From IMG/VR virus record IMGVR_UViG_3300025133_009608, positions 186,001-250,000 of that record: a DNA stretch of 64,000 bases, one strand, 5' to 3'. This document shows, piece after piece, positions 5,381 to 63,600 of the stretch; position 1 is the first letter of the stretch, and each line of letters begins with the position of its first letter. The position numbers were made by a program, and so were the translations under genes. The notes below the pieces were generated by a model. It was not told the origin of the DNA, ran no database searches, and saw only the letters and a program-made list of their open reading frames with translations.

Positions 5381-5435
5381 TTCTATTCTCCCTTCATATC
5401 ACTATAATGAATCGATCTTATTTATCGAGGTAGCC

Positions 5436-7555: not shown

Positions 7556-7594
7556 TTTCTGCTCCGTGGTAATTTTAATTATCTTTTAAAGATA

Positions 7595-8386
7595 TTATCC
7601 TGTTATCATCCAACCATTTATTCCATCGCATATTATTGTTATGCTTGCGTGATTTATATTCAAATCAAAGCTTGCCGCGCCATCTATTGTATCCGGAGAT
7701 GATGGATTTATTCTTATTCTATTTGTTCCGGCATTTCCGGTTGCATCTTTTATTATTAACTTCATTCCCGCGGATGTCCCCCTGGCCGGAAGGGCAATAT
7801 CTATCGTACTTATCGGGTTGCATCTTAATAAATAATCACTTTCCGTCGCGGAATAATTTGAAGAAATGTCCGTGATTGAAACCTTGACCCCTCCATCTAT
7901 CTTCATATTTCCCCCCAGATGGACGGGAGCCGTCGGGGTGCCTGTTCCTATGCCTATGTTGCCGGAAGTCCCCTCGAGGCGAATGTAGGTCGTATAATTG
8001 GCCTTTAGGTCCAGGGTCTCGGACGCCGCATCCCCCTTTATCTGCACGGAGGAGTCTCCCCAGAACAATCCCCTGTTATTATCACAATAAAAGTTGTTCC
8101 CCTGAACCCTAACCCCTCCGCCCTTGAAGGTGTAATAACTCCAAGACCCGGCAGCCCCGGGGACTGAGCCGGTGCCGAATCCAATTCCGCCATCAGTCTC
8201 AATTAAGAGCCTTTCCGTTCCGGCGGTTGAAAATCTTATTTTATCTTCATCTGGTGATTTCTCTACTTCTATTTTGGTGTCTGCATCCGCATCTTTTAGT
8301 TCAGATATACTTAAAGAGCTTTCATTTACATCATCTCCAGTTATTGAATCATCTAAAATTTGCCTTCCAGTAACTCTTGTTCCCAT
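7595..8386 (-). CDS. Virion structural, tail-fibre/baseplate-type protein
   Basis: DADADTKIEVE, GNIGIGTGTP and C-terminal LP...IIKD...GNAGTN..I...DTIDG motifs typical of phage fibre/connector proteins. Confidence 0.65.
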   Translation of the reverse strand: MGTRVTGRQILDDSITGDDVNESSLSISELKDADADTKIEVEKSPDEDKIRFSTAGTERLLIETDGGIGFGTGSVPGAAGSWSYYTFKGGGVRVQGNNFYCDNNRGLFWGDSSVQIKGDAASETLDLKANYTTYIRLEGTSGNIGIGTGTPTAPVHLGGNMKIDGGVKVSITDISSNYSATESDYLLRCNPISTIDIALPARGTSAGMKLIIKDATGNAGTNRIRINPSSPDTIDGAASFDLNINHASITIICDGINGWMITG

Positions 8387-11864: not shown

Positions 11865-11957
11865 TCTGCGCCCGCATGGATGATATGTTGCTATTATACT
11901 AGAATAATTAGCAGGGATTTTATTCTAAAATATAAATGAGCATAACCCTGATAATCA

Positions 11958-24376: not shown

Positions 24377-26623
24377 TCATTTTGAAGGCAGCGTCTTTAA
24401 TATGTTTTTGCACTTAGGATATCCACTACATGCAAAAAACTTTCCGTTAGATGATGTTCTTTCTACAACTTCATTCTTTTTACACTTTGGACAAGTAACT
24501 CCTGTTCCCTTCGCGACTGCTTTCTTTTTGCTTTTTTCTATAATATTCCCATCGGCATCTATATTGACAATGGTCTTGCACTTTGGATATTGATTGCAAG
24601 AATTAAATTTCCCATACCTGCCGGTCTTCTCTATCAAGTCTCCATTTTTGCACTTGGGACACTTCATTCCAATAGACTTGGGCGCTTCACGCAGAATCAT
24701 TTCGTCATTTTCGCCAACACTCGCCGTGAACTTGCATACTGGATAGCTCTTACAGCCGAAGAACGGCCCTCGCTTTGACTCTCTTTTTATAACTATATTG
24801 GAGCACTCGGGACACTTATGACCCGTCTCTACTGTCTCTGGTGCGTTTTCCTTCAACCCAAGCTTTGCTGTCCCATCGCATTCGGGCCACGCAGTACACG
24901 CCAAAAACGGTCCAAATTTAGATAACTTCTTCCTCATCTTCTCGGAGCATTTTGGACACTCAACGTCCGATACAAACGTGCTGGGAAGCTCTGCCTCCAT
25001 GGCGGAGTCGACCTGATCGCTTAGGCCGGAATTAAAAAACTCCAAAACGTCTGGCAGCCTTTTGCTTCCATCTGCAATTTTATCTAAATTAGATTCCATG
25101 TCTGATGTAAACTTAGCATCAACGATCGATGGAAAGCTGTCAGTCAAATAGTCAGAGACCATGATTCCGGTTTCTGTTGCTGCCAAAGACTTCTTTTTTC
25201 TTTCCACATACTTTCTATTAAGAAGAGTATCCAGAATAGAAGCATAGGTGCTCGGCCTTCCAACTCCCTCCTTTTCCAGGAGCTTAATCAATGATGCGTC
25301 AGAAAACCTAGACGGAGGTTTGGTAAAATGCTGGGAAGAAGTAAGTTTATTCCAAGATATCTTTTGGCCAACACTTACCTTTGGAAGGATGACATCATCT
25401 TTTATCTCTCCGTACTCCCTTAGGAAGCCATCGAACAGTAGCGTGCTTCCGTTTTTCTTAAAATTGAATATAGTTTTTCCATGCTCATATTCCAGCCTCA
25501 AAGAGACCTGTCCAAATTCGGCGTCTGCCATTTGGGAGGCGGAAAATCTACTCGCAATCAATCGTAATAGCTTCTTCTCGTCCGAGGTTACGGGAGATGA
25601 GGACGGATCATACGTGGGGATTACCGCCTCGTGCGCATCTTGGGAGCCAGATTTTGGGCCATAAGCGATCACGGTCTTCGAGAGATATTTTTTTCCGTGG
25701 CTTTTCTCGAGCCTTGCTCTTAGGTCTAAAATCTTTTGAGGATCCACCCGAATAGAGTCTGAGCGGTGATACGTGATATTACCCTGACTAAAAAGACTTT
25801 GAGCTACATTCATGGTTTTTTTTGCACTCCACCCAAATGCATTGCTTGCAGACTGCTGCATAGTTGAGGTTATAAATGGGGGTGCGGGCTTTCTCGCCCT
25901 CTTCTTCGTTGTAAAATCAGAAACAATCAAATCGTCTTTCTTCTTGTCCATAGCGGAAGTAATCTTATCTGCATCTGCTTGGCTCTTTAATTTCGTCGCT
26001 TTTCCGTTTATTCCATAAAAGTCAGCATCAAAACTTAACTTTGTGGAAACAGAGATCTCCCAATATTCATCTGGAACAAATGATTGAATAATCTTTTCTT
26101 TATCTGCTATAAACTTGAGAGCTACAGACTGAACTCTACCCGCACTGGTTCCACGCAAGCCCTTATTCCACATCACAGGGCTCACACGGAATCCCACCAG
26201 TCTATCCGTCATTCGACGAGCCTGCTGGGCATCATAAAGATCCTCATTAAAAGGAATTGGATTCTTAATCCCGCCCAGCACATCTTTTTTCGTTATTGTT
26301 TTAAAAATTGAACGATAAATCTTCTTTCCGCGCTTCGGCAGGTGGCCCTTGATGTGAAAGGCTATTCCGCTACCTTCCCTGTCTGCATCAGTCGCGATAT
26401 AAATTTCATCGTGCTGCTTCGCCTGCAGCTTGATGTTTTTTACAACATCCTTTTTGTCCTGACTGACAAGATAGTTCGCGGTCCAAGTATCAGTATCAAT
26501 GCCCATATTCTTTTTGGACAAGTCCATAATATGACCAACAGATGCTATGACCGTGTAGCCGGGCCCCAGAATCTTTTTTATTTTTGCGCACTTATTCGGT
26601 GATTCGACAATTACTAACGGCAT
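24377..26623 (-). CDS. topA: DNA topoisomerase I (type IA) with C-terminal zinc ribbons
   Basis: IVESPNK, ATDADREG, SAGRVQS, ITYHRSDS, QDAHEA, GRPSTYA; four C4 ribbons. Confidence 0.95.
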   Translation of the reverse strand: MPLVIVESPNKCAKIKKILGPGYTVIASVGHIMDLSKKNMGIDTDTWTANYLVSQDKKDVVKNIKLQAKQHDEIYIATDADREGSGIAFHIKGHLPKRGKKIYRSIFKTITKKDVLGGIKNPIPFNEDLYDAQQARRMTDRLVGFRVSPVMWNKGLRGTSAGRVQSVALKFIADKEKIIQSFVPDEYWEISVSTKLSFDADFYGINGKATKLKSQADADKITSAMDKKKDDLIVSDFTTKKRARKPAPPFITSTMQQSASNAFGWSAKKTMNVAQSLFSQGNITYHRSDSIRVDPQKILDLRARLEKSHGKKYLSKTVIAYGPKSGSQDAHEAVIPTYDPSSSPVTSDEKKLLRLIASRFSASQMADAEFGQVSLRLEYEHGKTIFNFKKNGSTLLFDGFLREYGEIKDDVILPKVSVGQKISWNKLTSSQHFTKPPSRFSDASLIKLLEKEGVGRPSTYASILDTLLNRKYVERKKKSLAATETGIMVSDYLTDSFPSIVDAKFTSDMESNLDKIADGSKRLPDVLEFFNSGLSDQVDSAMEAELPSTFVSDVECPKCSEKMRKKLSKFGPFLACTAWPECDGTAKLGLKENAPETVETGHKCPECSNIVIKRESKRGPFFGCKSYPVCKFTASVGENDEMILREAPKSIGMKCPKCKNGDLIEKTGRYGKFNSCNQYPKCKTIVNIDADGNIIEKSKKKAVAKGTGVTCPKCKKNEVVERTSSNGKFFACSGYPKCKNILKTLPSK

Positions 26624-37170: not shown

Positions 37171-37710
37171 TTATCGGCTCTCTACTTTTAGGTTTTTGAT
37201 CGCTTCATTTTTTATCTGACGAACCCTTTCTGGGGAAACTCCGATATCTTTTCCGATTTCGGCCAAAGTATGTCCGAATAGAATATTTTTAATTAATACG
37301 CCACTCGCCCTTCTATCCGAGTAGTTTTTTACATCAATAATAGTGGTGGCCCCATCTTCGTAACAACTACAGGTGCTTGCAAGCATATCTCTGCATATCT
37401 TTTTCGCAGCGCTATTTTTTTGATTTTTTGAAAACGAGTCCCTTAAGCCGTTTGCCACATTCCAATGCATCCATCTAAAGAAATCAAATTCCTTTTTATA
37501 ATCATAAGAAGAGATGGCGCGCCACATACCCAGCTTTATAATTTGGAGAACATCATCCTTTTCCGAAAAGAATCTAGACTTATTGAACTTACTCTCGGCC
37601 AGATGCTGAACTTTTCCGAATAATTCGTGCCTCCATTTCAATGAATCATTATTTTCATTAATTATATAAAGTATTTTTATATCCAAATTGGTTATGCTAT
37701 AAAACGTCAC
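37171..37710 (-). CDS. Phage sigma-70-family factor (regions 2 and 4)
   Basis: DDVLQ...GMWRAISSYD...F..W; TLAEIGKDIGVSPERVRQIKNEAIKNL. Confidence 0.85.
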   Translation of the reverse strand: MTFYSITNLDIKILYIINENNDSLKWRHELFGKVQHLAESKFNKSRFFSEKDDVLQIIKLGMWRAISSYDYKKEFDFFRWMHWNVANGLRDSFSKNQKNSAAKKICRDMLASTCSCYEDGATTIIDVKNYSDRRASGVLIKNILFGHTLAEIGKDIGVSPERVRQIKNEAIKNLKVESR

Positions 37711-38288
37711 TTACCATCCTCTTCATCGTCATCTCTTGGGTGATATTGGTCAACAAAAACTCCTTCTTTCCAGGTTCTAACAACGGATGTTTCCTCAGAC
37801 AAGGTAAACACGGCCATAACGTCTTCTCTTGTAGAAAATGATGCCGCACTAATATGCCTAGTCCCGCATCCCTCTGGAACTTCAAGAGCCGGATTTTCTA
37901 CAATTAGATAAATTCTATTTCCAATTATTTGTCCATTTCTATTTACAATAACGGCGCCATCATGGCCTTCTTCTAGCAAGAGCTTTATATCATCTTTAAA
38001 AGAAAGAGAGGAAACGTCCATATATTTTTGGATTGGATTTACTCCAATCTGTCTCATTCCGCCTATTATGTGCCCCTTCGCAGTGTCAAATACCCCAAGC
38101 ACAACCAGGATCCCTATGGTCTTCTTCTTTTCGAGAAAGTCTTTTGAGATTTCACATAAAAAGCTAAAAATTCTCTTTTCTACTTTCTGGTGCTCTCTTG
38201 CTGCGCTAAATTGAAACGAAAAATCTGCCGATGCAGATTTGTTATGGGCCACAGGCCCCAGCTGTTCGGTTGGTTGATCGTCGTTCAT
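37707..38288 (-). CDS. Standalone diadenylate cyclase (DAC/DisA_N) domain protein
   Basis: HDGAVIV, GTRHISAA, LSEET. Confidence 0.8.
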   Translation of the reverse strand: MNDDQPTEQLGPVAHNKSASADFSFQFSAAREHQKVEKRIFSFLCEISKDFLEKKKTIGILVVLGVFDTAKGHIIGGMRQIGVNPIQKYMDVSSLSFKDDIKLLLEEGHDGAVIVNRNGQIIGNRIYLIVENPALEVPEGCGTRHISAASFSTREDVMAVFTLSEETSVVRTWKEGVFVDQYHPRDDDEEDGK

Positions 38289-38365
38289 TCTAAACCTCGG
38301 ATTGTTTTGTGTGGCTAGATTATACTAATCCGAAGGCAAGGTTTTTCGATAAAAACTTATTTTAT

Positions 38366-39757
38366 TTATCCACTAAACCCAAGCTCGTCACGAGTATAGT
38401 GCAGCTCCTCTCCGTCGTCGTCTATTGTCTGAACATTTACTGGGGCTCCCCATACTTCAAACAAGTATCCCATTACCTTTTCTAGGTGCTTGGGATCGAG
38501 AGTCCCAATGTCTCCACTTGTATGTTCGAGCTCCAAGCCCTCATGACTTGCCTTTACAATGCACAGCTCCGGGGCGCGATACCCATAGCAATCAGAAATC
38601 AAATTCTCAACCACATCGTCTAAATCTGTTGATATAATCTTAATAATTTTTCCGGCCTTTTGGTCTTTTATATACTTATAGCAAAACAGCTTGAGGCCCT
38701 CCGCGATCTCCTTGGTCAAATAGGTTCGCACGAAAGATACGTCATCTTCATTTGCAACAACTTCATAAATTTTTTCTAGGCCATTTATTTCAGACTCTCC
38801 GTCTTCAAACTTTTTGTCCCAACGCTTCTTAATGTCGTTTAAAAGAGTGAAGCCCAAAAAGTATGGATTAATTTTTAACTTATTTCCGCCAGGCTGAACA
38901 ACTCTTTCGTGAATCTTTACGAACTCTAGGTATTCGGCCTCTGTGATAGACTTCATTCTGTACATTATCTCCGCGTGAATCCAAGATGCAATCCCTTCGT
39001 TTAGTCGCTGAGTAACGTACTGTGGATAAAAATAATATGACTCCTCTCTGATGATCTCAAAAATATCTCGCTCCCAATCTTCCAAGTTTGCGTGCTGAAT
39101 TAAAAACCACAAAAGATCATATTCAGGATGCGGAGGAAACGTGGGGGGCTTTCTCTCTTTTTTCTTTTTCGGGGTACCAAGAATGTCTACGAACTCATCT
39201 TTGTGCCCTGCTCGCGCTTTATAGGACTTCTTAGGGAGCCCTTTACCATAGGGCTTTCTCAAAACGCCCCTGTGCCAGTCTATATTTTTATCCATAGAAA
39301 AGGCTACATCCATAATATGCTCAACGGCCTTTAGTCCGTGTTTCTCAATGTAGTCATCTATCCTTCTTGCCCTCTCTGCTGCGTGATAAACCATTTTGTT
39401 ATCTGTCTGTTTGAATAAATAATTATGCTTAAAACAGGCAGAGTGACCGAGCACATGTGCCATTACCATTATGTTTGCAATATCTGAATTTGTATCCAAT
39501 AAAAAAGCGTATGACGGATCATTATTTAGCACAAGCTCATAAACCTTTGAGTGTCCCATCTCTCCTTGCATCTTCTGATACTCATAAGACTGCCCATACG
39601 ACCAGTGCCTTGATCTTGACGGAAGACCATAAGACATAACCTCCAAAAGAACCTCCTGTCCAACAACTTCCCATTGGACTGGATAATAATCGAGATTCAA
39701 CTCTTCTTTTGCAATCTTTTCAATTTCTTTAAGTTTTTCTTTTAAATTTTTATTCAT
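38366..39757 (-). CDS. spoVR: SpoVR/YcgB family protein
   Basis: GLPSR..HWSYG, YELVLN.DP, AHVLGH..FKHN, NEGIASW, NPYFLG. Confidence 0.9.
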   Translation of the reverse strand: MNKNLKEKLKEIEKIAKEELNLDYYPVQWEVVGQEVLLEVMSYGLPSRSRHWSYGQSYEYQKMQGEMGHSKVYELVLNNDPSYAFLLDTNSDIANIMVMAHVLGHSACFKHNYLFKQTDNKMVYHAAERARRIDDYIEKHGLKAVEHIMDVAFSMDKNIDWHRGVLRKPYGKGLPKKSYKARAGHKDEFVDILGTPKKKKERKPPTFPPHPEYDLLWFLIQHANLEDWERDIFEIIREESYYFYPQYVTQRLNEGIASWIHAEIMYRMKSITEAEYLEFVKIHERVVQPGGNKLKINPYFLGFTLLNDIKKRWDKKFEDGESEINGLEKIYEVVANEDDVSFVRTYLTKEIAEGLKLFCYKYIKDQKAGKIIKIISTDLDDVVENLISDCYGYRAPELCIVKASHEGLELEHTSGDIGTLDPKHLEKVMGYLFEVWGAPVNVQTIDDDGEELHYTRDELGFSG

Positions 39758-39787: not shown

Positions 39788-40981
39788 TTATTGACCCTTC
39801 TTTTTCTTCTTGGAAATATTATCTATGTTAAAGAACACTTTTAATGCGTCGAACACCTGGCTTCTCTCCGTTACTCTCATGGATACAAATCTAGTTCTAT
39901 TGATCTCTCGGGCAAGCAGGCTTGATAGCAGATCTCCCTCTCGAATCCACGCCCTATGCTCTGTGCTTGGAATAATCTCCCCGTATCCAATGGCCGTAGT
40001 CAGCGGAAGCAGTTTTTTTATATAGTCAACGCACAGAAGGTTATCTTCGCCCCAGTTGTCTCCATCAGACCACTCCATTATATAATTGTTGTATTCCTCG
40101 GGCGGGTGGTTTGACATAATGTGTTCATATGCCATCTTAAATGCAGAACTACACTTTGTTCCTCCGCCGCTATTTACGCTGAAAAATTGCTCTTCATCGA
40201 CTATGAAGGCTTCGGTGTCATGGGCAATAAATACTAGCTTTATATTATCGTACCTTCTCTTTAAAAACTGCACCATCCAGAAATAAAAGCTCTTCGCTAT
40301 ATATCTCTTCTCCTCAGTCATCGAACCGCTGCGGTCCATCATTGCATATATAACAGCGTTTGAATGATACTCTCTTACCGTATCCCAGGACCGATAGCGA
40401 AAATCTGACTCATTTATGCCATCAATTTTCGCCTCACCCTTAGCTGCATTTCTTTTTATGTTTTGAAGAATTGTTTTCTTCAAATCTAAATCTGGATTTA
40501 TTCCCTTCTTCTCAATTGAATCTACCTCTTCGTACTCTACGGCGATTGAGCTTCCAAGGTTTGGTTCCATCCACGGCAAATCCAGCTCCTTAAGAAGCAC
40601 ATCTACTAACTCGTCTATGGATACTTCCGCATCAAAGGTTCGGGGACCCGTTTCATCTCCAGGCTTTCCATCTCCGGGCTTACCCCTTTGGGGTTTTCCG
40701 TTCCCGATTCTAAATTTATCGCCCGGCTTCGTGCTAACCCCCTGGCCGACACCGCCGTTCTTATTTAGTTTCCCATATTTAAATTTGTACTGATCCAAGA
40801 ACTTTATCGGAACTTTTATCTTCTTATTGCCGTCGGTTGTTATAACATTGTATTCTGTAATAAGATCTTTTCCGTGTTTTCTTATGGCGTCTTTTACCAA
40901 CTCCTTATGCCTGTCAGAATCTCTCTTTCCACGGCGTTTAAGATTCCAAATGTCAGAGAGGCTTTTGCCATTTTTCGACAT
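39788..40981 (-). CDS. yhbH: YhbH/YeaH (DUF444) vWA-like protein
   Basis: D..RH, SNAVIYAMMDRSGSM, FIAHDTEA, SGGGTKCSSA, SDGDNW. Confidence 0.9.
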   Translation of the reverse strand: MSKNGKSLSDIWNLKRRGKRDSDRHKELVKDAIRKHGKDLITEYNVITTDGNKKIKVPIKFLDQYKFKYGKLNKNGGVGQGVSTKPGDKFRIGNGKPQRGKPGDGKPGDETGPRTFDAEVSIDELVDVLLKELDLPWMEPNLGSSIAVEYEEVDSIEKKGINPDLDLKKTILQNIKRNAAKGEAKIDGINESDFRYRSWDTVREYHSNAVIYAMMDRSGSMTEEKRYIAKSFYFWMVQFLKRRYDNIKLVFIAHDTEAFIVDEEQFFSVNSGGGTKCSSAFKMAYEHIMSNHPPEEYNNYIMEWSDGDNWGEDNLLCVDYIKKLLPLTTAIGYGEIIPSTEHRAWIREGDLLSSLLAREINRTRFVSMRVTERSQVFDALKVFFNIDNISKKKKKGQ

Positions 40982-40989
40982 TGCTTATC

Positions 40990-42915
40990 CTAGTTTCTGG
41001 CCATCAGTGAGCTGACGTACTTGAGCAGGTTGTTTGCGCTTTCCGGAGTATACCCATGATGATCACAAAGCGCCTCGATTACTACATTTAACTTTTTAAG
41101 TGCATTTTCATCTGGATTTCTTGTACTGACCGTCAACCTGATGACGTCCTGCCGCTCATCAAATAGCTGCTTCTCGAGACCCTCTCTTAGTCTGGGGTGC
41201 TCTTTGTAATTATAGGTTCCATTATCATTTGCAGAGCGGAGCATCTTTCTAAAGATTTCTTGTCTGAATGATTTCTTTCCGGACTCTGTAATTTTCACCT
41301 TCTCTTCTATTGAGCGCATAAGTCTTTCGTCTGGCTCTCGAAGATTCCCCCACTCATCCTCTATTTTTGAGCCATCCAAAAATGCCTCTACTTGATCCAT
41401 ATAGTTTTGAAGTAAGTTTGAAACCTCTTCTTCGAAGTTTAGGAAGAAAGCTTTTTGAACCTCGTTCTTAGCCAACTTGCTATACTCCTCTATCACAAAG
41501 GTTAAGATATTCTCTAGTCGCTCAATTTCCTTTTCGTCAAGTTTCGGATTGGAGATGAACCCTGATCTAATAGATCGAATTATATCGACTGGAGAAATAC
41601 TAGAAACGCCATCTTCGGCAAGGGTTGCTGAAATTCTATTTATAATATATCGAGGAGACACCCCGTCCATGCCTTCTGATGAAAACTCTTTTCTAAGAGC
41701 CTGAACTTCCATCTTTGTAAAGCCCTCAACGTCATCTCCATTATATAGGCGCATTTTATTCATTATGGATAAGCCCTCATTTTTAGAAGTCTTAAGCCTT
41801 GAGAGCACTGCAAACATAGCGGCACAATGAAGCGTATACGGGGCTATATGAACGCCATCGAATCTAGACTGAGAGATCAGCTTTTCGTATATCTTCATCT
41901 CTTCGCTGACCCGAGTATTGTAAGGAACTTTTACCACAATTATGCGGTCGTGCAGAGCCTCCATCTCATCTTTCGCCAAAAAACGATCGTATTCTGTCTG
42001 GTTTGTGTGGGCTAATAAAAATTCATCTGCATAAATTAATGGAAATCTTCCAGTTTTAATATTCTTTTCTTGTGCCAATGTTAGCAGAACATAGAGGAAT
42101 TTCTGATCGACCTTGAGCATTTCGACGAACTCCATCATCCCGCGATTTGCTATATTTAACTCCCCATCAAATCTGTACGCTCTAGGATCAGATTCTGCTC
42201 CATATTCCCCAATCTTGCTAAGATCCATGGAGCCAACTAATTCTGAAATATCTTGGCTCTTTTTATCTGACGGCACGAAGGTTCCAATTCCAGTTCTAGA
42301 CTGCTCTGATAGTATCACTCTCTTTACTGGGAGGTCTAGAAAGTTCCCATCGTATTTATCTCGAAGGATAAGACCCATAAGAGGGCTTAGCTGCCCACGG
42401 ATTAGGATGCCGTGCTCCTCCTTGAACTGGCCCCTTAGGCTTTCGGGAATTGCGCATAACGGGTCCTCCTGCATTGGGGAGTCTGAGAGTCCGTATAGGG
42501 CGCCCTCGTCTATTCTGGAAAATGCCTCCATTCCTCTTTTTAGCGAAATGGCCAACTGAGACTTACCACTAGAAGTTGGTCCAAACATTAAAAGTATTCT
42601 TCGAGAAACTTCACTGCCAGTAGCTGCGGCCCGAAGGTAGGACATGATTTCTTCTATTGATTCGTCAATACCAAATAAATCATTTTCAAAGAATTTATAA
42701 TTTGTTATATTGCCATCCTCGTCTCTGTCAATTCCGGCGTGTTCGATCATCTTTAGGGCCCGCTCGTGAGCACCCATATGAATCGAGGGATTCGTGATTA
42801 CCATCTCGATATAATCTTTGAGAGTGCCCTTCCACAAGGACTCTTCGCCGGCCTCAATGTGCTCGCCTAGCGCGTCTAAAATTGAAAGATTTTTCTTTGA
42901 AGTCTTTTTTGGCAT
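40990..42915 (-). CDS. prkA: PrkA/YeaG AAA+ serine kinase family protein
   Basis: GPTSSGKS, QDISELVGS, ESDPRAY.FDGELN.ANRG..EFVEMLK, EGMDGVSPR. Confidence 0.92.
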   Translation of the reverse strand: MPKKTSKKNLSILDALGEHIEAGEESLWKGTLKDYIEMVITNPSIHMGAHERALKMIEHAGIDRDEDGNITNYKFFENDLFGIDESIEEIMSYLRAAATGSEVSRRILLMFGPTSSGKSQLAISLKRGMEAFSRIDEGALYGLSDSPMQEDPLCAIPESLRGQFKEEHGILIRGQLSPLMGLILRDKYDGNFLDLPVKRVILSEQSRTGIGTFVPSDKKSQDISELVGSMDLSKIGEYGAESDPRAYRFDGELNIANRGMMEFVEMLKVDQKFLYVLLTLAQEKNIKTGRFPLIYADEFLLAHTNQTEYDRFLAKDEMEALHDRIIVVKVPYNTRVSEEMKIYEKLISQSRFDGVHIAPYTLHCAAMFAVLSRLKTSKNEGLSIMNKMRLYNGDDVEGFTKMEVQALRKEFSSEGMDGVSPRYIINRISATLAEDGVSSISPVDIIRSIRSGFISNPKLDEKEIERLENILTFVIEEYSKLAKNEVQKAFFLNFEEEVSNLLQNYMDQVEAFLDGSKIEDEWGNLREPDERLMRSIEEKVKITESGKKSFRQEIFRKMLRSANDNGTYNYKEHPRLREGLEKQLFDERQDVIRLTVSTRNPDENALKKLNVVIEALCDHHGYTPESANNLLKYVSSLMARN

Positions 42916-42931
42916 TCTACTTTTCTCCTGC

Positions 42932-43219
42932 TTATTTTTCTTCACCAAAGATGTCACGAATAGCTCTCTGGTCACCTTCTCTTATTTTATTAGTAATAAC
43001 CCTGGCCTCTTCTTTTGCTTTTTCAACTATTTCTTCTTTTCTTCTTTCTATCTTACCGAAGGGGGCCGAGACTTTTCTGATCAAAGTTTTATTTTGACAT
43101 TCATCGCATAAAAGATCTTCAAAATGATTATTACAAATTAGTTGTTTATATTTTAAAATTCCATAATTAAAATTATGCTGAGTCAAGCATTTGGTACATT
43201 CAAATGTATATTTTGGCAT
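42932..43219 (-). CDS. FmdB-like zinc-ribbon protein
   Basis: MPKYTFECTKC...CDEC. Confidence 0.7.
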   Translation of the reverse strand: MPKYTFECTKCLTQHNFNYGILKYKQLICNNHFEDLLCDECQNKTLIRKVSAPFGKIERRKEEIVEKAKEEARVITNKIREGDQRAIRDIFGEEK

Positions 43220-50211: not shown

Positions 50212-52635
50212 TTACCGTCTGCGTCTCTTGTCTATGATAGAGCCGCGCTGAAGCTTGTTAAAGCCCGACTTCTTCTTCTTGATTTTTCTGTGAACCTGGT
50301 CGGCAACGGTGTTAACGTTATCCTCTTCAAGATCGAGGGTCATTGCTGCCACTCTTCCTTTTTCTTTTTGGCCGGCGACCTCTGCCTGCATTCTGCTCTC
50401 TTGTTTGAGGCTTTCAATTCGGTCCCTGGGAAGCCCGAGTCCGGCGAACCAAGAGTAAATCTTTATGGAATCGGAGTCACTCTCTATGTCGTATACTCCC
50501 TGGAATACGGAGGCTCCGTTTGTTTGCTCTGAAATCATATGAAAACAATAATTTATATTTATTGCCGGAAGCTTGTTAAGAACGCCCTCTGGGGCTGAAA
50601 TTATAACTCCACCGACCCTAGTCTGAGAGATGTCAAAGCCAGATGCCAACATATTCCCACTAAGACTCTCTATTACCGCCTCTGCTAGCGCCGTCTCCTC
50701 CATATAATCTTCAACTTCAATCATCCCATAAACAGAGCAGTCTCCGCATGAGATTATCTTTCCAAAGTCACTTGGATCCATTGAAGTATATCGAGACGGA
50801 CGAGACGTAAGTGTATTAAATACATGAAGCGGTTCAACAATTGCATTGTTAGATACGCTCCAAAAGTTATTCTGACTGAGGTTAGAATAAATTTGCTCGA
50901 TTCTCGCATTATCAGCCACAATAAGACTCGAAACCATATTGTCAGAAGTCATTCTTGCAAGTCTAGAAAGGGTTTCTATCGAGTTTCGCTTAGACCGGGC
51001 GTCCTCGGTTGCCTTCGGAAGAATGTAAATCACCCCCACTGGCATGCCGGTCTCAAATAACATCCCCACCATAGTGTCAACGCTTGAAGAGCCCGTTCCG
51101 CCGCCGCCCGATATTGCCAAATAAACCATGTGGTTTCCCGCAGCAACGTCTCCTACGAACTTATGTATATCGGACTCGTTTTCTTCAAAAATCTCTCGAC
51201 CAAGATCCAGATCCTTTCCCGTCCCACCAAGACTGCCCTCAAGAAGCAGCTTCTGAGTGGGAAGAACATCTATAAACTCCAGGTCTTGCGCGGAAGTATT
51301 AATTACTCCAACGTCATATCCTTTTTTATGCATTGTTTCTGCAATTCTCGACCCGGCCTGACCGACACCTATTACTGCTATCTCAATGCTGACAGACTGC
51401 TGAGTTATTATGCTTGGCACATCGTCCTCCATAGTTTTGCTTACCTTGGCCCTTAGAGCCTCAAGGACGTTTTCATCCAAAGAGCTTCCAGAATCTTCGG
51501 GCTGCTCTGTCGAATCATCAAAGGCGTCCATGAGTGCCTCATTTTCAGCCTCAATTTGCTTTGTTTTTTTCGTCTTCTTCTTTATCTTTACATCTTTGAC
51601 GCTAGTTTTCTTCGCTGTCATAAAATCCTCATAATAGCTCTTGAGCTGTGTTAAAATTTGATATTCGCTGGTTATCGCAAATTTTACCGGAGTTTCGTTT
51701 GCATTATACGAAATAACATCACAAAGATACTTGGAATGTTTATTCATAGGATCGGCATTCGTAGTTATTATATCACACCCCATCGCAGAGGCCTCATAGA
51801 GACTCATGCCCAGACCCTCTCGGGTTGACGGCATTAGCACACAATGAGAATTGTCATAAATACTAACCAGGTCTTTCGACACTAATATAGAATTTATTAG
51901 TATGATATTCTTACATTTTTCAGCCAGGGCCCGATCCCTATCAGAAAGAAGCCCGCTTATTGTCAGGGTTGTGCTCGCTCCAGAGTTAGTTGAGAATTTC
52001 GTATATGCCTTAATTACTTCTGTTGTATTTTTCTGACTAAACGATGGGTTTGTAGACCCGGGATGAAAAAATCTTATGCCAGAAAGGTCTTTTTTGTCTA
52101 CCTTTCGAGAAAAGGTGTCTTGATTTACGTAATTCCAGGACATTTTTTTTGCGTTTTCATATTTCCCAAAGATCTCTTTTGATGTATCTGTCAGGCACCA
52201 TATTTCATCAAACGTTCTGTATGAATTGTTATCTATATACCTCTTTATCGACCACTCCGGCATTGGTATGTCTATAATTTTCAAATTTGGGTTGCCCGTC
52301 CTGGCCCTTGTTGTCCATTGAGCCTTCGGCATGAAGGTTTCGAATGATATTATAAGATCTATATTATTTTTGGCAACAATATGTTCGATCCGAGTAGTTT
52401 GCGCGACAATTGTCAACCCGGCATGCAGATTGGCGTCGTTTGGCCGGGGGTACACCGGAGAGAATCCCGCCCGGCCATGAAGTCTTTTGAACTTTGGCTT
52501 TGCAGTATAAATAACTTTATTGTTTTTCGACAGCATGTCTCCAAGAGATTTCGCCAAATAATAAAGACCCGACTCGAATAGATACGTCTTTATTAGAATG
52601 CTCTTGTTTTTAATGTTATCTACTTCGCTATCCAT
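50212..52635 (-). CDS. In-frame fusion of a GT-B (GT4-like) glycosyltransferase and a tubulin/FtsZ-family GTPase (PhuZ/TubZ/CetZ-like), with internal RBS+ATG at 51621
   Basis: GT: PSTREGLGMSLYEA. Tubulin: GVGQAG, INTSAQDL, GGGGTGS, DPSD. Confidence 0.85.
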   Translation of the reverse strand: MDSEVDNIKNKSILIKTYLFESGLYYLAKSLGDMLSKNNKVIYTAKPKFKRLHGRAGFSPVYPRPNDANLHAGLTIVAQTTRIEHIVAKNNIDLIISFETFMPKAQWTTRARTGNPNLKIIDIPMPEWSIKRYIDNNSYRTFDEIWCLTDTSKEIFGKYENAKKMSWNYVNQDTFSRKVDKKDLSGIRFFHPGSTNPSFSQKNTTEVIKAYTKFSTNSGASTTLTISGLLSDRDRALAEKCKNIILINSILVSKDLVSIYDNSHCVLMPSTREGLGMSLYEASAMGCDIITTNADPMNKHSKYLCDVISYNANETPVKFAITSEYQILTQLKSYYEDFMTAKKTSVKDVKIKKKTKKTKQIEAENEALMDAFDDSTEQPEDSGSSLDENVLEALRAKVSKTMEDDVPSIITQQSVSIEIAVIGVGQAGSRIAETMHKKGYDVGVINTSAQDLEFIDVLPTQKLLLEGSLGGTGKDLDLGREIFEENESDIHKFVGDVAAGNHMVYLAISGGGGTGSSSVDTMVGMLFETGMPVGVIYILPKATEDARSKRNSIETLSRLARMTSDNMVSSLIVADNARIEQIYSNLSQNNFWSVSNNAIVEPLHVFNTLTSRPSRYTSMDPSDFGKIISCGDCSVYGMIEVEDYMEETALAEAVIESLSGNMLASGFDISQTRVGGVIISAPEGVLNKLPAININYCFHMISEQTNGASVFQGVYDIESDSDSIKIYSWFAGLGLPRDRIESLKQESRMQAEVAGQKEKGRVAAMTLDLEEDNVNTVADQVHRKIKKKKSGFNKLQRGSIIDKRRRR

Positions 52636-54851: not shown

Positions 54852-56969
54852 TTAAGCCAAATCAGATAGCATGGGCTCCGTGACGTCCCACTTCTCTAAA
54901 ATTTTATATAAATTAGCTATAGTTAAGCCTAAATGCTCTGCTGCTTTATTTTTATTACCATCAAACATCGACACGGCATCTTTTATATCCCTTACCGTTT
55001 TGTCCTGAAACTCTCTCCTGTATACGCTCAGTAGCTTCATTTCGAGATCCATCATATATCGATTTAAAGTTGACGAACTAATCCCAAGCTCCCTGGCCGT
55101 AGTGGTTGCAATTCCGCCATTATTAATAAGAGCTATATCAATTTTATTTCTAATCTCATCTGGAGTTAGCGATTTTGGCATATATCCTAAAATATCCACC
55201 CCGTAATATTCCAGCCGGGCGCTCAAGCCTCTATCATTTGTGCTTAGTGCCCGGGCCATTGCACTTTTATTGCCAAAATTTTCCTCCAGTATTCTTATGA
55301 ACTCCTCCCTACTGCTATCAAAATCTAAATCACGGTAGCTAATTCTACGCGCCTTTCCGCTTATTTCATATAGATCTATATTATTTCTTCTGACAACGGC
55401 TCTAATTCCACTCTCTGTTCTGTTTAGCTTTTTGGCAACAGCGTTTACGTCTCCATTTAGCTCATAAAGAGCAGCAACGACATCCTCCGCCGACACTGGC
55501 TGCTCATTATATAGAAGATCACTTTTATCAAATTTATATTTTTTCATCTTAGTGGCAAATGTGGCCGAGTGCATGTTGATCATCCGGGCCGCCTCGGCAA
55601 TTGAGTGGCTGGATTTTAGTGCATTTAAAATGCTACTCGATTCAGCGTCTTCTACTCTCTTTTTTATTTCATCAATATTTATCCCGAGCGTCCTCATCTC
55701 AATTCTAAGCGTTATTCCGGGCCTTTTTATTTTTCTTGATGTCTCTTTTACATTCCCATTGTTAGCAATCAGCGTGTCAATAATAATCTTCTTTCTCTCT
55801 TCGTCTTTTTTTGTATCCCTGTAATCTTCCGGGTTTAGCCCAAACTTATCCGCATAATGCGCTAAGCTCTGGTACTTCACTCCCATCAACTTGGCGGCAA
55901 GAACTCGGTCTCCATTTGCCTCTACTAAAAACTTTTCTATCTCTGTTATCTTTCTCCTCTCTTCTGCCGCTCGCTCTTTTTCTCTTTCCTCTTTGATGAT
56001 GTTTTTTGCATCAGAGATTTTACTACCAAAATCTGGATGTGCCTCTTCAAATATGTCGATGACTTTTCCCTTTAGCCACCAGGCCGCATCTATAACTTCC
56101 AAATCGGCAGCCTCCATGGAGTCCATATAATTTATGATTTCAAATTCTGGTTTAGACTTTATTTTGTCAGAATAGTAACTATTACTCGCACCAGAGGGAT
56201 ACGGAGAATGGGGATCGCTCTTCAGTATGTTGCACCTATTTCCGCCGCGAGCATGGTCTTTTCCATATTTTTCTTCAACATCTTTATATATCGAAACCTC
56301 AACTCCCAAGAATCGCCTTCTAAAGGACTCCTTGGACTCGCCATCGCTCCTCTCTATGGGCTCTAGGTGGACCATTTCTATCGGCTTATGGAGCGTAGTC
56401 CAGGCTGCGCCACATCGAATATGAGAATTGCCCTCGGTATAATCCGCTGACATCTGATTTGGACCGCCGCCCGCCGCGGGACCATCAGAATTGGGGGAAA
56501 AAATATCACTTAAGCGCATCTTTCTGCTCATAAATTTTTCTACCGCGCCCTTGTCGAATGGCTCGGTATATAATTTTTTTATGGTATCAAGCCCGGCGGA
56601 CGTTACATATAGACGGCCGATTTTGTGCTGTAAGAGCCGCGTGATGGGATTCTTTGCCTCTCCGACATACCAGTTGTATATCGGCAGGCCCGTTAGTGCG
56701 TCGACCACTTGTTTTCCGTCAACTTTGTTTTCTAATTTTAATACATATATGTAGTGAACGCCATCTTGCAGCGGCCCCATTGCTGAAACCTCCTGCCCCG
56801 GCCCTATCCCTAGGTGTGGGATCGGAACTCTGCCGCGCGCGCTCTTTGATATTAGATGACTATAGTCGCAGTTATATGGCATGAGCTCGCCGACGGCGGC
56901 AGCGGCGTCTTTCAGCCCCATGTCCTCCAATATGCCTCGTAATAGTGGGATTTTATTAAATCCTTTCAT
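54852..56969 (-). CDS. GIY-YIG nuclease with seven tandem Fis-type HTH domains and N-terminal tag
   Basis: YIYVLKLE..WYVGE...RLLQH..GAAWT.LHKP..YG...RGG; repeated L...GN...AA..LG.....L... Confidence 0.75.
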   Translation of the reverse strand: MKGFNKIPLLRGILEDMGLKDAAAAVGELMPYNCDYSHLISKSARGRVPIPHLGIGPGQEVSAMGPLQDGVHYIYVLKLENKVDGKQVVDALTGLPIYNWYVGEAKNPITRLLQHKIGRLYVTSAGLDTIKKLYTEPFDKGAVEKFMSRKMRLSDIFSPNSDGPAAGGGPNQMSADYTEGNSHIRCGAAWTTLHKPIEMVHLEPIERSDGESKESFRRRFLGVEVSIYKDVEEKYGKDHARGGNRCNILKSDPHSPYPSGASNSYYSDKIKSKPEFEIINYMDSMEAADLEVIDAAWWLKGKVIDIFEEAHPDFGSKISDAKNIIKEEREKERAAEERRKITEIEKFLVEANGDRVLAAKLMGVKYQSLAHYADKFGLNPEDYRDTKKDEERKKIIIDTLIANNGNVKETSRKIKRPGITLRIEMRTLGINIDEIKKRVEDAESSSILNALKSSHSIAEAARMINMHSATFATKMKKYKFDKSDLLYNEQPVSAEDVVAALYELNGDVNAVAKKLNRTESGIRAVVRRNNIDLYEISGKARRISYRDLDFDSSREEFIRILEENFGNKSAMARALSTNDRGLSARLEYYGVDILGYMPKSLTPDEIRNKIDIALINNGGIATTTARELGISSSTLNRYMMDLEMKLLSVYRREFQDKTVRDIKDAVSMFDGNKNKAAEHLGLTIANLYKILEKWDVTEPMLSDLA

Positions 56970-57009
56970 AGTAATAGGTCTCAAATTATTAGTAAGGATT
57001 TAGAATTCA

Positions 57010-60678: not shown

Positions 60679-63600
60679 TCAGCGCCCCTGCTTGGTAACG
60701 CTCGAAAGCCACCGGGCGCGAGCTGTCCGCCCATTAGGAGCAAGCCCACTATAGTCATCGATCTTATCCAGACCGAGCTCAAAAAAGTAGTAACCACCTT
60801 TTGCCTCTGCTAATCGACTGGCTGCAGAAATTGCGAAATCTGCATCACCGTATATTTCGTGTATTTTGCTATCAAAAAATTCATAAGGAGAGGCCTTCGC
60901 CAGAGACTCCGCAGCCTCCATTGTCAAGTGTCCGTATTCATCCGATTCGTGAAATTTTAGATCAAAAAAGATTCGAGGGCCTAATTCTATCATCCCCTTC
61001 ATGGCAATCGGTATTCTGTCTTTGTACTTATCTATTTTGTAAAGATCACTTCCAAAGAATACCCACGGAAAGCTCTCTATTATCCTGTCTATTGCGACTT
61101 CCGCAAGAACCTCGTACCTTTCATCGGCTGCCGTATCGGGGCCCTCCTCGAAAAAGGCCCATGGGTATTTCCCTGTAGCCAAGGCCTCCGCTGCGGCGAG
61201 CCCAAATTCCGAATATTCCGCCATCATGTGAAGGTTGAGCTTAAAAAATTCATCTGGATTTTTTTCGGATAAAGCTTTCGCGGCGGGCAGGGCTGCTGCC
61301 GCGTATATATCACTTGGGCCCTGCTTATGTATTTCTAATTGAAAATAAGAATATGGACGTGACTCTACCATGCATTTTACAAATTTCTTATTTAATACTT
61401 CAAATCTTGGGTCATTAAATCGGCCATTTAATAACTTTAAGTATTTTTCATAATCACTACATACATATCTCTTGGCCATCCTGATGGCTATCGTGATAAA
61501 CTCCTCGACGGTGTGTAGTCCGTTATCTGTAAAGTCAGAGAAGCTATCCGAGTTATTTTTCGCCAAGGTTGCATCAAGTGTGTGCATCGTGTTATTTGTC
61601 AGCAACTCTTTTAGATTAACATTGGTCGCGTACTCTCCTAAGGCCTTAATTGCTTGTCCTTTTTTGTAATAATCATTTTGATTCTCCATATTATATATCA
61701 CGTATCTATCCAAAAAGACTCTTGCAGACTCCTTTAGCCCTTCATCATCAAATACTTCATTAGGAAGGTTTTCCATCATATCTTGAATCATATACCCATC
61801 TGGGACGCCAAAGCCTTCGATTCTCGCATCCGAATTAAAGGCGTCAATCCATACCTTCATCCGTTCCCGAATAAATTCTATAGTTTTATATTTTTCAACC
61901 GGGAGAATCACCAACGCCCTCCATTCCAGATGGGATCCAAGAGATGTTTCTATTAGCATTTCTCGCAACTCCTCTGTTTCTAGCAAATCAAAGATCCCCA
62001 GAACCTCTTCTTCCGATATATGCTCGGAATGTAGGACGTATGAGCTCACAGCTTTCGAGATAAGCACATCTGGCAGGTGATTGTCCTTATTCGCCCTCAT
62101 AACCTTCTCAAATCCGTAACTTCGTTCGTCGATCATTATTGTTTCAATATTTTTAGCAAGAAACCTCAAAGCAATTGGGGATAGCGCAGACATCCCAAGT
62201 ACGGAAAAGAAAACACTACTGAGATTGTACTCTTTACCTTTCTCTTCCATATTGCTCAAAACACCGTCGACCAAGTTATGCTCCTCTCGACCGGCTAGGA
62301 CTGCTATAACTTCATCCGGAGACCATAGGGCTCCGGAGTAATAATTATCCATTATCTTTTCAGTCTCGGCAATCATCCAATAATCGTCTGAATCTTCATA
62401 ATCTATTGGAGCAAAATACTCATCCAGCCAATTACGAATATATGGTGCATACTTCTGTACCGGAGGGGCGTTTTCCTTTCCCTTTATTTGATGCACATTT
62501 CTGCCCGATGAGCCTCCCACCTCTATTGTCACGTGAGGCTCATTCTTGGCGTCTCTTAGAGAATAGATCTTAAGGCGCCCAATGATGATGTCATCGCAAT
62601 AGCCCCCAACGCAGTGCCCCATGTTGCGACCCTCGGTTTCGACATCCTCGGGCGGGACAAGAACCATCGTGTATCCGTCCCCAAAATCATGATGAACATT
62701 TTTTGTATTATATTCGCCAACTTCAATAGCCGGAACAAACTGCTCGTGCCACTTTTCGGCAGCCTGGATCATGGTCTGCGCGGAAATACTCTGCCATGGG
62801 CCCATTCCCGGCTCAGGGAACGCATCCAGAGAGTTCACATAATCCTTAATTTGAATTAAAACCAGCCGTGGCGATGCCGCTTCATTCATATTAATGTTCG
62901 CCAGCCACTTAATAAATGGCTTTCTATTCTTATGGGGCAACAGGTCATCACCGACGAGGGCAATGGCATTTAATGCCGATCTATTAAAAATTGGTCCATC
63001 CTCTGCCCTCTCGGAAAGGCTCTCAAAATAAGATCGAGGATCTTGCTCCGGGCTCTTTGCGATCTGCTTTTGCAATGACTTTATATTAATCTTTTTTAGA
63101 TACTCCTTATCTGCCTGTGCGGCAACCTTGTGCAGCTTTTCTATCTGGCCCATCCGGCCTCTTTCGCTTTCGCAAGCTCTAATTATTGATATATCTTTTG
63201 CCTCTTTCTTGAAGCCATTACTCCGAAGCCATTTCGACAGCCTATCTAGAGCATAATCAGGCTCATCTGGCCACTCATCCGGATCGAACTCAGACCACTG
63301 CTCATTTAGCGAAATATATTTAGATGGTATGTGACCATTGATAATTATTGTATCGTGATCAACTCCGTCATTAGCCGCCTCAGAATCAGAATACTCCACC
63401 CCCAGAGCCCAGGCTATGGAGTTTATCATTTTTTCTCTATAAATAGCCGGCTCCATCTCTATAACAGGGAGCTCTTCATTCTTTTGCTCATAATCTTTGC
63501 GCATCGCGCTTAAATCTATTTCAAATATATAGTCGCCATAAGAGTCAATTGCTTCTGGATTGAAGCTTGCGAAAATAGCACTTCCAACCCAGCGATTTGA

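What the first reader, a model, noticed from the sequence alone, without database searches (positions are those of the whole stretch)
37707..38288. Standalone viral diadenylate cyclase
Seen: a DAC domain with DGA intact and RHI in place of RHR, with no TM or sensor domain. Established: c-di-AMP controls K+/osmotic homeostasis, and cyclic nucleotides signal in anti-phage immunity. Inference: constitutive synthesis to alter turgor/lysis timing or to jam nucleotide-based immunity.
Basis: partly seen in the sequence, partly recalled or inferred. Interest (0 to 1): 0.65.

Follow-up and report, generated by a model that had tools for sequence, protein, structure and literature searches.

The report
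Sensor-less diadenylate cyclase of marine jumbo phages
A 316-kb uncultured marine phage carries a small, strongly conserved enzyme of the type that makes the bacterial second messenger c-di-AMP; it always sits behind a stress-regulator gene trio, and I found no report of such a virus-encoded enzyme.

Summary
Window 37707-38288 (-) is a 193-aa ORF that is a DAC domain and nothing else (Pfam 46.1 bits against a cut-off of 27). An AF2 model matches CdaA, CdaM and DisA structures. There is no TM segment and no sensor domain.

The window lies in a 316,664-bp IMG/VR phage record that has a large terminase.

"RHI instead of RHR" is not a lesion:
- GTRHI[ST]A occurs in 118 of 120 relatives.
- The nearest cellular kin, DacZ-like cyclases, also lack the third Arg. 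NCBI-named DacZ proteins carry RHM.
- D110, G111, A112, Y127, R144, H145 and S164 are invariant, and E165 nearly so.
- dN/dS is about 0.05.

The gene always follows prkA-yeaH-spoVR. A sigma-70-like gene follows it in about half of the lineages.

Sister lineages fill the same slot with a YpsA-type SLOG protein, or with SLOG plus DAC.

No DAC was found in INPHARED, PHROGs, BFVD or the searched literature.

Best reading: an active, probably unregulated c-di-AMP synthase that is part of a host-physiology takeover cassette. The product, the host and the physiological role are all untested. The immunity-jamming idea has no support here.

The parts
37707..38288 (-). Stand-alone diadenylate cyclase gene, 193 aa, 21.5 kDa, pI 5.2. 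Residues 1-21 are a variable tail, 22-27 an invariant DFSFQF motif, about 24-182 the DAC fold, and 183-193 an acidic tail.
37953..37961 (-). Codons for D110-G111-A112 (DGA motif).
   Evidence: Read. D110 and G111 are invariant and A112 is at least 90% conserved in the 62-sequence family alignment. All three are invariant in the alignment with DacZ-like domains.
37851..37859 (-). Codons for R144-H145-I146, the 'RHR' motif with Ile in the third place.
   Evidence: Read. GTRHI[ST]A occurs in 118 of 120 family members. R144 and H145 are invariant also against DacZ-like domains.
37791..37799 (-). Codons for S164-E165-E166, the SEE(T) divalent-cation and phosphate motif of CdaA-type cyclases.
   Evidence: The role of the motif is described in PMC12974146.
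38289..38365 (-). 77-nt spoVR-DAC spacer. It holds TAGTATAAT (38319-38327) about 30 nt before the ATG, and a GAGG ribosome-binding site. It may be an internal promoter.
   Evidence: The element is kept in the closest relative L029 and is similar in L002 and L008. Other lineages have no spacer. The generic promoter scan was not enriched over shuffles.
37171..37710 (-). Sigma-70-family factor (regions 2 and 4), 179 aa. Its GTG start overlaps the DAC stop by 4 nt.
   Evidence: It follows the DAC in 9 of the 18 related loci examined.
38366..39757 (-). SpoVR/YcgB-family gene, immediately upstream of the DAC.
   Evidence: Pfam 350 bits. It precedes the DAC in every related locus that reaches upstream of the DAC.
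39788..40981 (-). YeaH/YhbH (DUF444) gene.
   Evidence: Pfam 278 bits. Synteny.
40990..42975 (-). PrkA/YeaG gene (AAA_PrkA plus PrkA C-terminal domain).
   Evidence: Pfam 380 and 235 bits. Synteny.

Best explanation
The gene encodes a catalytically competent DAC-domain enzyme with no sensor domain. It belongs to a lineage of uncultured, mostly marine jumbo phages of about 220-395 kb.

Proposed mechanism:
1. In the infected cell, two DAC domains meet head to head. Each binds ATP and a divalent cation (Mn2+ or Mg2+).
2. They condense the two ATP into 3'3'-c-di-AMP.
3. The gene is expressed from the same tightly packed minus-strand block as prkA-yeaH-spoVR, and here also a phage sigma factor.
4. 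The phage-made messenger then overrides the host's own c-di-AMP set-point. That set-point controls K+ and osmolyte uptake, turgor, cell-wall state and stress signalling. This would be part of a cassette that re-programmes host starvation and stress physiology during a long jumbo-phage infection.

Shown here: the domain, the fold, the conserved catalytic residues, purifying selection, viral origin and conserved synteny.

Inferred: the product, dimerisation, unregulated activity, co-transcription and the physiological target.
For: Domain and fold.

Catalytic residues. D110, G111, A112, Y127 (= CdaA Y187), G142, R144, H145 and S164 are invariant, and E165 nearly so, across the phage family, stand-alone cellular DACs and DacZ-like domains.

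The missing third Arg is normal for this branch.
- DacZ-like relatives carry A, M, V, L, T or I there.
- DacZ is an active cyclase (PMC6741144).
- PanS minimal DACs with a still more degenerate DGF/GGR pair are active and constitutive (preprint 10.64898/2026.08.10.743927).

The DGA-to-RH spacing is 34 residues. Against CdaA the query has one extra residue between DGA and Y127 and one between Y127 and RH, so it lacks the long lid extension tied to cUA synthesis.

Selection.
- 186 relatives at 46-85% identity.
- Mean column identity 59%.
- dN/dS about 0.046 against the 85%-identical relative.

Synteny.
- DnaB-PrkA-YeaH-SpoVR-DAC occurs in all 16 DAC-anchored viral loci, in the closest relative, and in more distant RHK and RHR variants.
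- Gaps between the genes are 8, 30, 77, -4 and 1 nt.

Virus-specific.
- Only one hit among 185,579 species genomes, and that contig is itself a phage fragment.
Against: - No biochemical data exist for any RHI-type DAC. I found no single-residue study of the third Arg. Only RHR-to-AAA triple mutants and first-Arg mutants are reported (PMC3328451, PMC13022847, PMC12974146).
- The host is unknown, so it is not known whether it has c-di-AMP receptors.
- The phage carries no c-di-AMP riboswitch, no RCK_C and no DarA-type receptor.
- The DAC is missing from sister lineages that keep prkA-yeaH-spoVR. The cassette therefore works without it.
- c-di-AMP can activate a TIR-SAVED immune effector (preprint 10.1101/2025.06.19.660554), which would be a cost to the phage.
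- The invariant DFSFQF motif may mean the enzyme is regulated rather than constitutive.
Confidence: 0.55

Rival explanations
1. The enzyme is active but makes another nucleotide signal than c-di-AMP. Candidates are an asymmetric dinucleotide such as 3'3'-cUA, or linear pppApA. It would act on a receptor that has not been recognised.
For: - DAC domains are now known to make cUA as well as c-di-AMP (preprint 10.64898/2026.08.10.743927).
- The family is distant from every characterised DAC. Only 451 of 1.84 billion representatives reach E<=1e-3, and scores against all NCBIfam equivalogs are far below their cut-offs.
- In four more distant lineages the DAC directly follows a YpsA-type SLOG protein, a predicted nucleotide-ligand binder.
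Against: - The lid between DGA and Y127 is only one residue longer than in CdaA.
- The adenine-stacking Tyr and the TRH and SEE residues are canonical.
- The closest characterised class, DacZ, makes c-di-AMP (PMC6741144).
Confidence: 0.15
2. The enzyme serves counter-defence. Its product would keep a guard-type system silent, one whose effector is held off by a DAC-made decoy signal (Panoptoo-like). Alternatively it would compete with immune cyclic nucleotides at their receptors.
For: - Minimal stand-alone DACs act as constitutive decoy-signal synthases whose loss releases the PanE effector. A phage supplying the same signal would in principle defeat that guard.
- Jumbo phages carry many anti-defence genes. 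This is general knowledge and was not tested here.
Against: - PADLOC gave no match for the DAC or its neighbours, apart from a weak sigma-region-4 match to MzaA.
- No Tad2-like sponge family was found. PF13876 was also absent, but that search rang in no control genome and shows nothing.
- The gene's fixed partners are prkA-yeaH-spoVR and a sigma factor, not anti-defence genes.
- c-di-AMP can activate TIR-SAVED.
- The motifs DGA and TRHI differ from the DGF and GGR of PanS.
Confidence: 0.1
3. The protein is a catalytically dead DAC fold. It would act as a binder or sponge for c-di-AMP or ATP, or as a protein-protein regulator of SpoVR, PrkA or the sigma factor.
For: - The third Arg of RHR is missing.
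- Pfam matches only the C-terminal half of the model.
- An invariant family-specific N-terminal motif, DFSFQF, has no known catalytic role.
Against: - Every other catalytic position is invariant over 46-85% divergent relatives. A mere binder would not need that.
- Active DacZ and PanS enzymes also lack the third Arg.
Confidence: 0.07
4. The gene is a cellular gene on a mis-assembled or mis-classified contig, or a recent passenger with no role in infection.
For: - One relative sits in a MAG labelled Pacearchaeota.
- An Atlas cluster lists 'Archaea 48%'.
- One related record is classed as a provirus by IMG/VR.
Against: - The MAG contig carries the same phage gene order, DnaB-PrkA-YeaH-SpoVR-DAC.
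- The record has a large terminase, 7 tRNAs and PHROG-typed replication genes.
- A relative has direct terminal repeats and is 100% complete.
- Synteny is conserved over deep divergence and dN/dS is about 0.05.
Confidence: 0.03

Closest known systems
DacZ (archaeal diadenylate cyclase, NCBIfam NF041371) and bacterial DacZ-like or PTS-EIIA-DAC proteins
   Same: - It is the best-scoring DAC class: 50.9 bits, against 14.9-21.9 bits for CdaA, CdaM, CdaS and DisA.
- These proteins are the nearest cellular hits in the exhaustive search.
- They share the core G..G..N..DGA..G..Y..G.RH..S and the absence of the third Arg of 'RHR'.
   Different: - The phage protein has no DACZ_N, DacZ_P or EIIA sensor domain.
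- It is 193 aa rather than 270-450 aa.
- It keeps SEE, as CdaA does, where DacZ has SES.
- It has an N-terminal DFSFQF motif.
- Its score is far below the equivalog cut-off of 430 bits.
- It is viral.
CdaA / DacA catalytic domain (PDB 8ogk, 6hvm, 4rv7)
   Same: - Top structural matches: about 162 aligned columns, TM by target about 0.65.
- Matching motifs HDGA, YL, GTRH and SEET.
   Different: - No three-helix membrane anchor.
- No CdaR or GlmM partners nearby.
- Ile in place of R205.
- 23-27% identity.
PanS, the minimal DAC of Panoptoo defence (preprint 10.64898/2026.08.10.743927)
   Same: It is a DAC domain and nothing else. It shows that sensor-less DACs with a degenerate RHR can be constitutively active.
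   Different: - PanS is about 150 aa and cellular.
- It is paired with a PanE S2TM-beta effector.
- Its motifs are DGF and GGR, with a longer lid.
- The phage gene is paired with spoVR and a sigma factor, and has canonical DGA, TRH and SEE.
CdaS (sporulation-specific DAC of Bacillus)
   Same: It is small, soluble and without a membrane anchor. It is genetically tied to a sporulation or stress regulon, and prkA, yhbH and spoVR are sporulation-regulon genes in Bacillus (established knowledge).
   Different: - CdaS has two N-terminal regulatory helices and a full RHR.
- It scores only 19.6 bits here, against a cut-off of 225.
Phage-borne PrkA-YeaH-SpoVR modules (Thermus phages phiYS40 and TMA, Ralstonia phage RsoM2USA, some huge phages)
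   Same: The same three-gene module occurs in other large phages (and PHROG families).
   Different: - Those modules share at most 34% PrkA identity with this one.
- tblastn with this DAC found no match in any of the 50,697 INPHARED records.

Membership tests
DAC domain (Pfam PF02457, DisA_N) | HMM score above the curated gathering cut-off | tested here: met
   46.1 bits against 27. The six-frame search of the genome gave 46.6 bits.
DAC domain (Pfam PF02457, DisA_N) | Mixed alpha/beta DAC fold | tested here: met
   AF2 pLDDT 80.7. Foldseek hits to CdaA, CdaM, DisA and CdaS at probability 1.0, with 72 hits at E<=1e-3.
DAC domain (Pfam PF02457, DisA_N) | DGA motif | tested here: met
   D110-G111-A112. 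D110 and G111 are invariant and A112 is at least 90% conserved in the family; all three are invariant against DacZ-like domains.
DAC domain (Pfam PF02457, DisA_N) | RHR motif, all three residues | tested here: not met
   The sequence is R144-H145-I146. The third Arg is also absent in DacZ (RHM) and in most DacZ-like proteins. The strict motif therefore does not define the whole family.
DAC domain (Pfam PF02457, DisA_N) | Metal and phosphate-binding S-E-E(T) and adenine-stacking Tyr | tested here: met
   S164-E165-E166-T167 and Y127-L128 align with CdaA SEET and YL.
DAC domain (Pfam PF02457, DisA_N) | Head-to-head dimerisation of two DAC domains | tested here: inconclusive
   Complex prediction with 2 copies plus ATP and Mn gave 'no answer', score 0.01. 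This is evidence neither way.
DAC domain (Pfam PF02457, DisA_N) | Synthesis of 3'3'-c-di-AMP from ATP | not testable with these tools
   Needs purified protein and LC-MS.
DacZ (NF041371 equivalog) | Score at or above the equivalog cut-off, and an N-terminal DACZ_N or DacZ_P domain | tested here: not met
   50.9 bits against 430. Only the DAC half aligns (query 16-184 to profile 106-267), and there is no N-terminal domain.
CdaA (TIGR00159) | Three N-terminal TM helices and a score at or above the cut-off | tested here: not met
   21.9 bits against 188.8. No TM segment.
DisA (NF010009) | DAC plus linker plus HhH DNA-binding domain, about 350 aa | tested here: not met
   14.9 bits against 201. 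The protein is 193 aa with a single domain.
PanS / Panoptoo | Two-gene operon with a PanE S2TM-beta effector | tested here: not met
   The neighbours are SpoVR and a sigma factor. PADLOC 2.0.0 gave no hit, but that release predates Panoptoo.

The most novel reading that the evidence does not exclude
The slot between spoVR and the sigma gene is a phage-encoded second-messenger module. It holds a DAC, a YpsA-type SLOG protein, or both, depending on the lineage.

In this reading the phage makes its own cyclic dinucleotide, c-di-AMP or a non-canonical one. That signal is read by phage or host PrkA-YeaH-SpoVR, by the SLOG protein, or by the sigma factor, to time infection or to hold the host out of dormancy. 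Alternatively it keeps decoy-guarded defences of the Panoptoo type silent.

This would be the first virus-encoded DAC signalling circuit.
Probability: 0.15. Interest if true: 0.85.

Novelty: new variant of a known kind. Interest (0 to 1): 0.62.

Why it matters
c-di-AMP is treated as a cellular homeostasis signal. Viruses are known to degrade or sponge cyclic nucleotides, not to make this one.

This is a conserved, widespread family of phage-borne DACs with more than 180 sequence clusters. Several members come from Tara Oceans data, and they sit on contigs up to 395 kb. Some abundant ocean jumbo phages would therefore write directly into their host's K+, osmolyte and stress signalling.

The fixed link to prkA-yeaH-spoVR, a module whose biochemical role is still obscure in bacteria, gives a testable handle on that module.

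The exchange of DAC and SLOG at one genomic slot suggests the two have related roles.

The finding also shows that the textbook 'RHR' motif is really 'RH' for a large branch of the family.

Tried and rejected
- **Known phages.** Megablast of 20 kb and tblastn of the DAC against INPHARED gave no match. PhoH and DnaB find only distant cultured phages, at most 37% and 28% identity. The host could not be inferred that way.
- **Riboswitches and receptors.** There is no Rfam hit in the window and no c-di-AMP riboswitch in the genome. No RCK_C or DarA-type receptor was found.
- **psbA.** None found, so there is no cyanophage signature.
- **Homodimer.** Complex prediction with ATP and Mn gave no verdict, score 0.01. 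It is not used as evidence.
- **Sequencing runs.** There is no expression evidence.
- **Promoters and terminators.** The scan showed no enrichment over shuffles. AGTATAAT occurs 15 times in the genome and only a few copies lie upstream of genes. It is not a clear phage promoter motif.
- **Defence families.** PADLOC gave nothing relevant. The Tad2-like family and PF13876 were absent. My link of PF13876 to Acb2 is from memory, and that search rang in no control genome, so it shows nothing.
- **Literature.** Four full-text searches for phage or viral DACs found no report. One DOI was not held.
- **Third Arg.** I could not find single-residue data on the third Arg of RHR. I also could not retrieve the H. 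volcanii DacZ sequence itself. The RHM statement rests on two NCBI-named haloarchaeal DacZ proteins.
- **Longer relatives.** Proteins from the exhaustive search (P0122 of 313 aa, P0141 of 268 aa, P0149-P0151 of 277-437 aa) were not characterised beyond Pfam.

Full report
**1. The observation**

The ORF at window 37707-38288 on the minus strand is real. It is 193 aa, starts with ATG, and has GAGG 7 nt upstream.

- Pfam places it in the DAC family above the curated cut-off: 46.1 bits against 27. The match covers only the C-terminal half of the model.
- The NCBIfam DacZ model aligns residues 16-184 with its whole cyclase half.
- An AlphaFold2 model built on 62 relatives has pLDDT 80.7 and pTM 0.76.
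- Foldseek matches that model to CdaA, CdaM, DisA and CdaS structures over about 162 columns. Probability is 1.0 and 72 hits reach E<=1e-3. The full DAC fold is therefore present.
- No TM segment is present and no second domain.

**2. It is viral**

- The window is bases 186001-250000 of a 316,664-bp IMG/VR record that CheckV estimates 94% complete.
- The record has 43% GC, seven tRNAs and a tmRNA.
- It has a large terminase (phrog_675, 215 bits) and PHROG-typed replication genes.
- Related records reach 335 kb with direct terminal repeats, and 395 kb.
- No cultured phage is close.
- The tmRNA and the sigma-70-type factor point to a bacterial host. The host itself could not be identified.

**3. 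RHI is a clade trait, not a defect**

- The word search found 186 relatives of 176-207 aa, several labelled Tara, on contigs up to 328 kb. 118 of the 120 listed carry GTRHI[ST]A.
- In the family alignment D110, G111, G142-T143-R144-H145-I146 and S164-E165-E166 are invariant. A112 and Y127 are nearly so.
- The exhaustive profile search of 1.84 billion representatives returned only 451 hits at E<=1e-3.
- After the phage family come some stand-alone cellular DACs of about 170-200 aa. After those, the nearest proteins are DacZ-like (DACZ_N or DacZ_P plus DAC) and PTS-EIIA-DAC fusions.
- In those proteins the third 'RHR' residue is A, M, V, L, T or I and only rarely R. Two proteins that NCBI names DacZ read GARHMAG.
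- DacZ of Haloferax volcanii is an experimentally active cyclase, and its authors cite only the DGA motif (PMC6741144).
- A 2026 preprint shows that minimal PanS DACs with a DGF/GGR pair are constitutively active.
- The published loss-of-function mutants replace all three residues or the first Arg (PMC3328451, PMC13022847, PMC12974146). I found no data on the third Arg alone.
- Across the phage family, stand-alone cellular DACs and DacZ-like domains, the invariant core is G59, G65, N84, D110-G111-A112, G119, Y127, G142, R144-H145, S164 and G176.
- Against the 85%-identical relative, dN/dS is about 0.046. dS is 1.74, which is near saturation, so the ratio is approximate.

I conclude that the enzyme is very probably active.

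**4. Product**

- Against CdaA the query has three single-residue insertions between DGA and SEE: one between DGA and Y127, one between Y127 and RH, and one between RH and SEE.
- This is unlike the extended flexible lid that lets PanS make 3'3'-cUA.
- 3'3'-c-di-AMP is therefore the most likely product. A different nucleotide cannot be excluded without chemistry.

**5. Context**

The gene lies in a tightly packed minus-strand block: DnaB, PrkA, YeaH, SpoVR, DAC, sigma, class II RNR, a small ORF, PhoH. The gaps from prkA to RNR are 8, 30, 77, -4 and 1 nt.

- All 16 viral loci found through the DAC keep the order DnaB-PrkA-YeaH-SpoVR-DAC, as far as each fragment reaches, at 46-70% DAC identity.
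- So do the closest relative, a contig binned into a Pacearchaeota MAG, which is therefore a mis-binned phage fragment, and two more distant variants: P0121 on L019, and P0125 with RHK on L021.
- A sigma-70-like gene follows the DAC in 9 of 18 loci.
- When I anchored the search on SpoVR instead, 17 of 25 viral loci had a DAC next to it.
- Five sister loci (SpoVR 46-55% identical) and three distant ones lacked a DAC.
- In four of those sister loci the slot between spoVR and the sigma gene holds a YpsA-type SLOG protein. PF06908 scores 37.6 and 32.8 bits, above the cut-off, in two of them.
- In four more distant DAC-bearing lineages the order is SLOG-DAC. Two of these reach upstream far enough to show spoVR before it, and two have a recognisable sigma gene after it.
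- The window's own genome has no SLOG gene.

The slot therefore holds SLOG, SLOG plus DAC, or DAC. That points to an exchangeable nucleotide-signalling function attached to the PrkA-YeaH-SpoVR cassette.

**6. What the phage lacks and has**

- There is no c-di-AMP riboswitch, RCK_C domain or DarA-type receptor.
- There is a stand-alone DHH-DHHA1 protein of 289 aa, about 116 kb from the DAC and next to adenylosuccinate synthetase.
- Its sequence resembles NrnA, Rv2837c and TmPDE.
- It is conserved in the three complete relatives.
- It belongs to a PHROG family annotated DHH phosphoesterase (phrog_4771). A link to c-di-AMP turnover is possible but not indicated by context.

**7. Mechanism and rivals**

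Most likely, the phage raises c-di-AMP in the infected cell as part of a host stress and dormancy takeover cassette.

- The effects on K+ and osmolyte uptake, turgor and the cell wall follow from established c-di-AMP biology. They are inferred, not shown.
- Alternative products, a counter-defence role and an inactive binder are discussed under rivals.
- The counter-defence idea gains conceptual plausibility from Panoptoo but has no support from this genome.
- c-di-AMP can trigger a TIR-SAVED effector.

**8. Novelty**

- I found no DAC in 50,697 INPHARED genomes with this query.
- PHROGs has no matching family.
- No DAC fold appears in BFVD.
- The full-text library holds no paper on a phage-encoded DAC.
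- JGI's pipeline already labels some members 'DisA with diadenylate cyclase activity'. The domain call itself is therefore not new.
- What is new: the viral family, its DacZ-like RH-only active site, and its fixed place behind prkA-yeaH-spoVR with the SLOG exchange.

**9. Limits**

- There is no expression evidence.
- The homodimer prediction gave no verdict.
- The host is unknown.
- Nothing in this window resembled human sequence or a toxin, and no alternative genetic code was used.

Noticed in passing
Sister viral loci L038:7540-8067, L039:7467-8051, L051:7413-8027, L055:7033-7620. Also L021:1322-1858, L022:433-939 and L037:7591-8070.: A YpsA-type SLOG protein of 168-205 aa occupies the spoVR-to-sigma slot in lineages without a DAC. 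In others it sits directly upstream of the DAC. The window's own lineage has a DAC only.
   Followed up: partly
Outside the window: G000:C1 about 106953-107822 (-), which is L025:955-1824 (-).: A stand-alone DHH-DHHA1 phosphoesterase of 289 aa (phrog_4771) resembles NrnA, Rv2837c and TmPDE. It lies next to adenylosuccinate synthetase and is conserved in three complete relatives. It is a possible pApA or c-di-AMP hydrolase.
   Followed up: partly
Outside the window: G000:C1:135597-135999 (-).: A phage-encoded one-piece tmRNA with tag ANNNNHFYAAALAA. The genome also has seven tRNAs, for Arg-TCT, Leu-TAA, Ser-TGA, Asn-GTT (two copies), Met and Lys-TTT.
   Followed up: no
window 50212-52635 (-): An 807-aa protein fuses a group-1 glycosyltransferase domain (about residues 200-298) to a tubulin/FtsZ GTPase domain (residues 418-583).
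   Followed up: no
L045, L047 and L048 about 6825-7972; L040 and L042 about 4900-6000.: spoVR is interrupted by an insertion of about 0.9-1.2 kb at residue 258, or at residue 100 in other lineages. The RNR ORFs in L039 and L051 are about 1470-1570 codons stop to stop, and L039 carries an intein-like sequence. These look like mobile introns, inteins or homing elements in the cassette genes.
   Followed up: no
L018 (NZCX01000035.1, 8.2 kb, 'Candidatus Pacearchaeota' MAG).: This contig carries DnaB-PrkA-YeaH-SpoVR and the start of a DAC in the phage order. It is a phage fragment binned into an archaeal MAG.
   Followed up: yes
window 38319-38327 (-) and 11893-11901 (-); also G000:C1 about 126208 (-).: TAGTATAAT or AGTATAAT lies 28-30 nt upstream of the DAC and of an SLT-domain gene, and just upstream of a tRNA-Arg gene. 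These may be host-type -10 elements. The motif is not clearly enriched.
   Followed up: partly
window 3968-5380, 24377-26623, 54852-56984 and 60679-63999 (all -).: The window also encodes a CCA-adding or poly(A)-polymerase-family enzyme, a type IA topoisomerase with four zinc ribbons, a 710-aa protein with Fis-type and other HTH motifs, and a protein of at least 1,106 aa with a PcfJ-like region; its ORF touches the end of the window.
   Followed up: no
Proteins P0140, P0152 and P0163 (locus L024 for P0140).: Stand-alone cellular DACs of about 180-200 aa share the N-terminal [DN][FY]xxQ motif with the phage family. P0140 sits beside aconitase-C and fumarase genes. They may be the cellular source of the phage family.
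   Followed up: no
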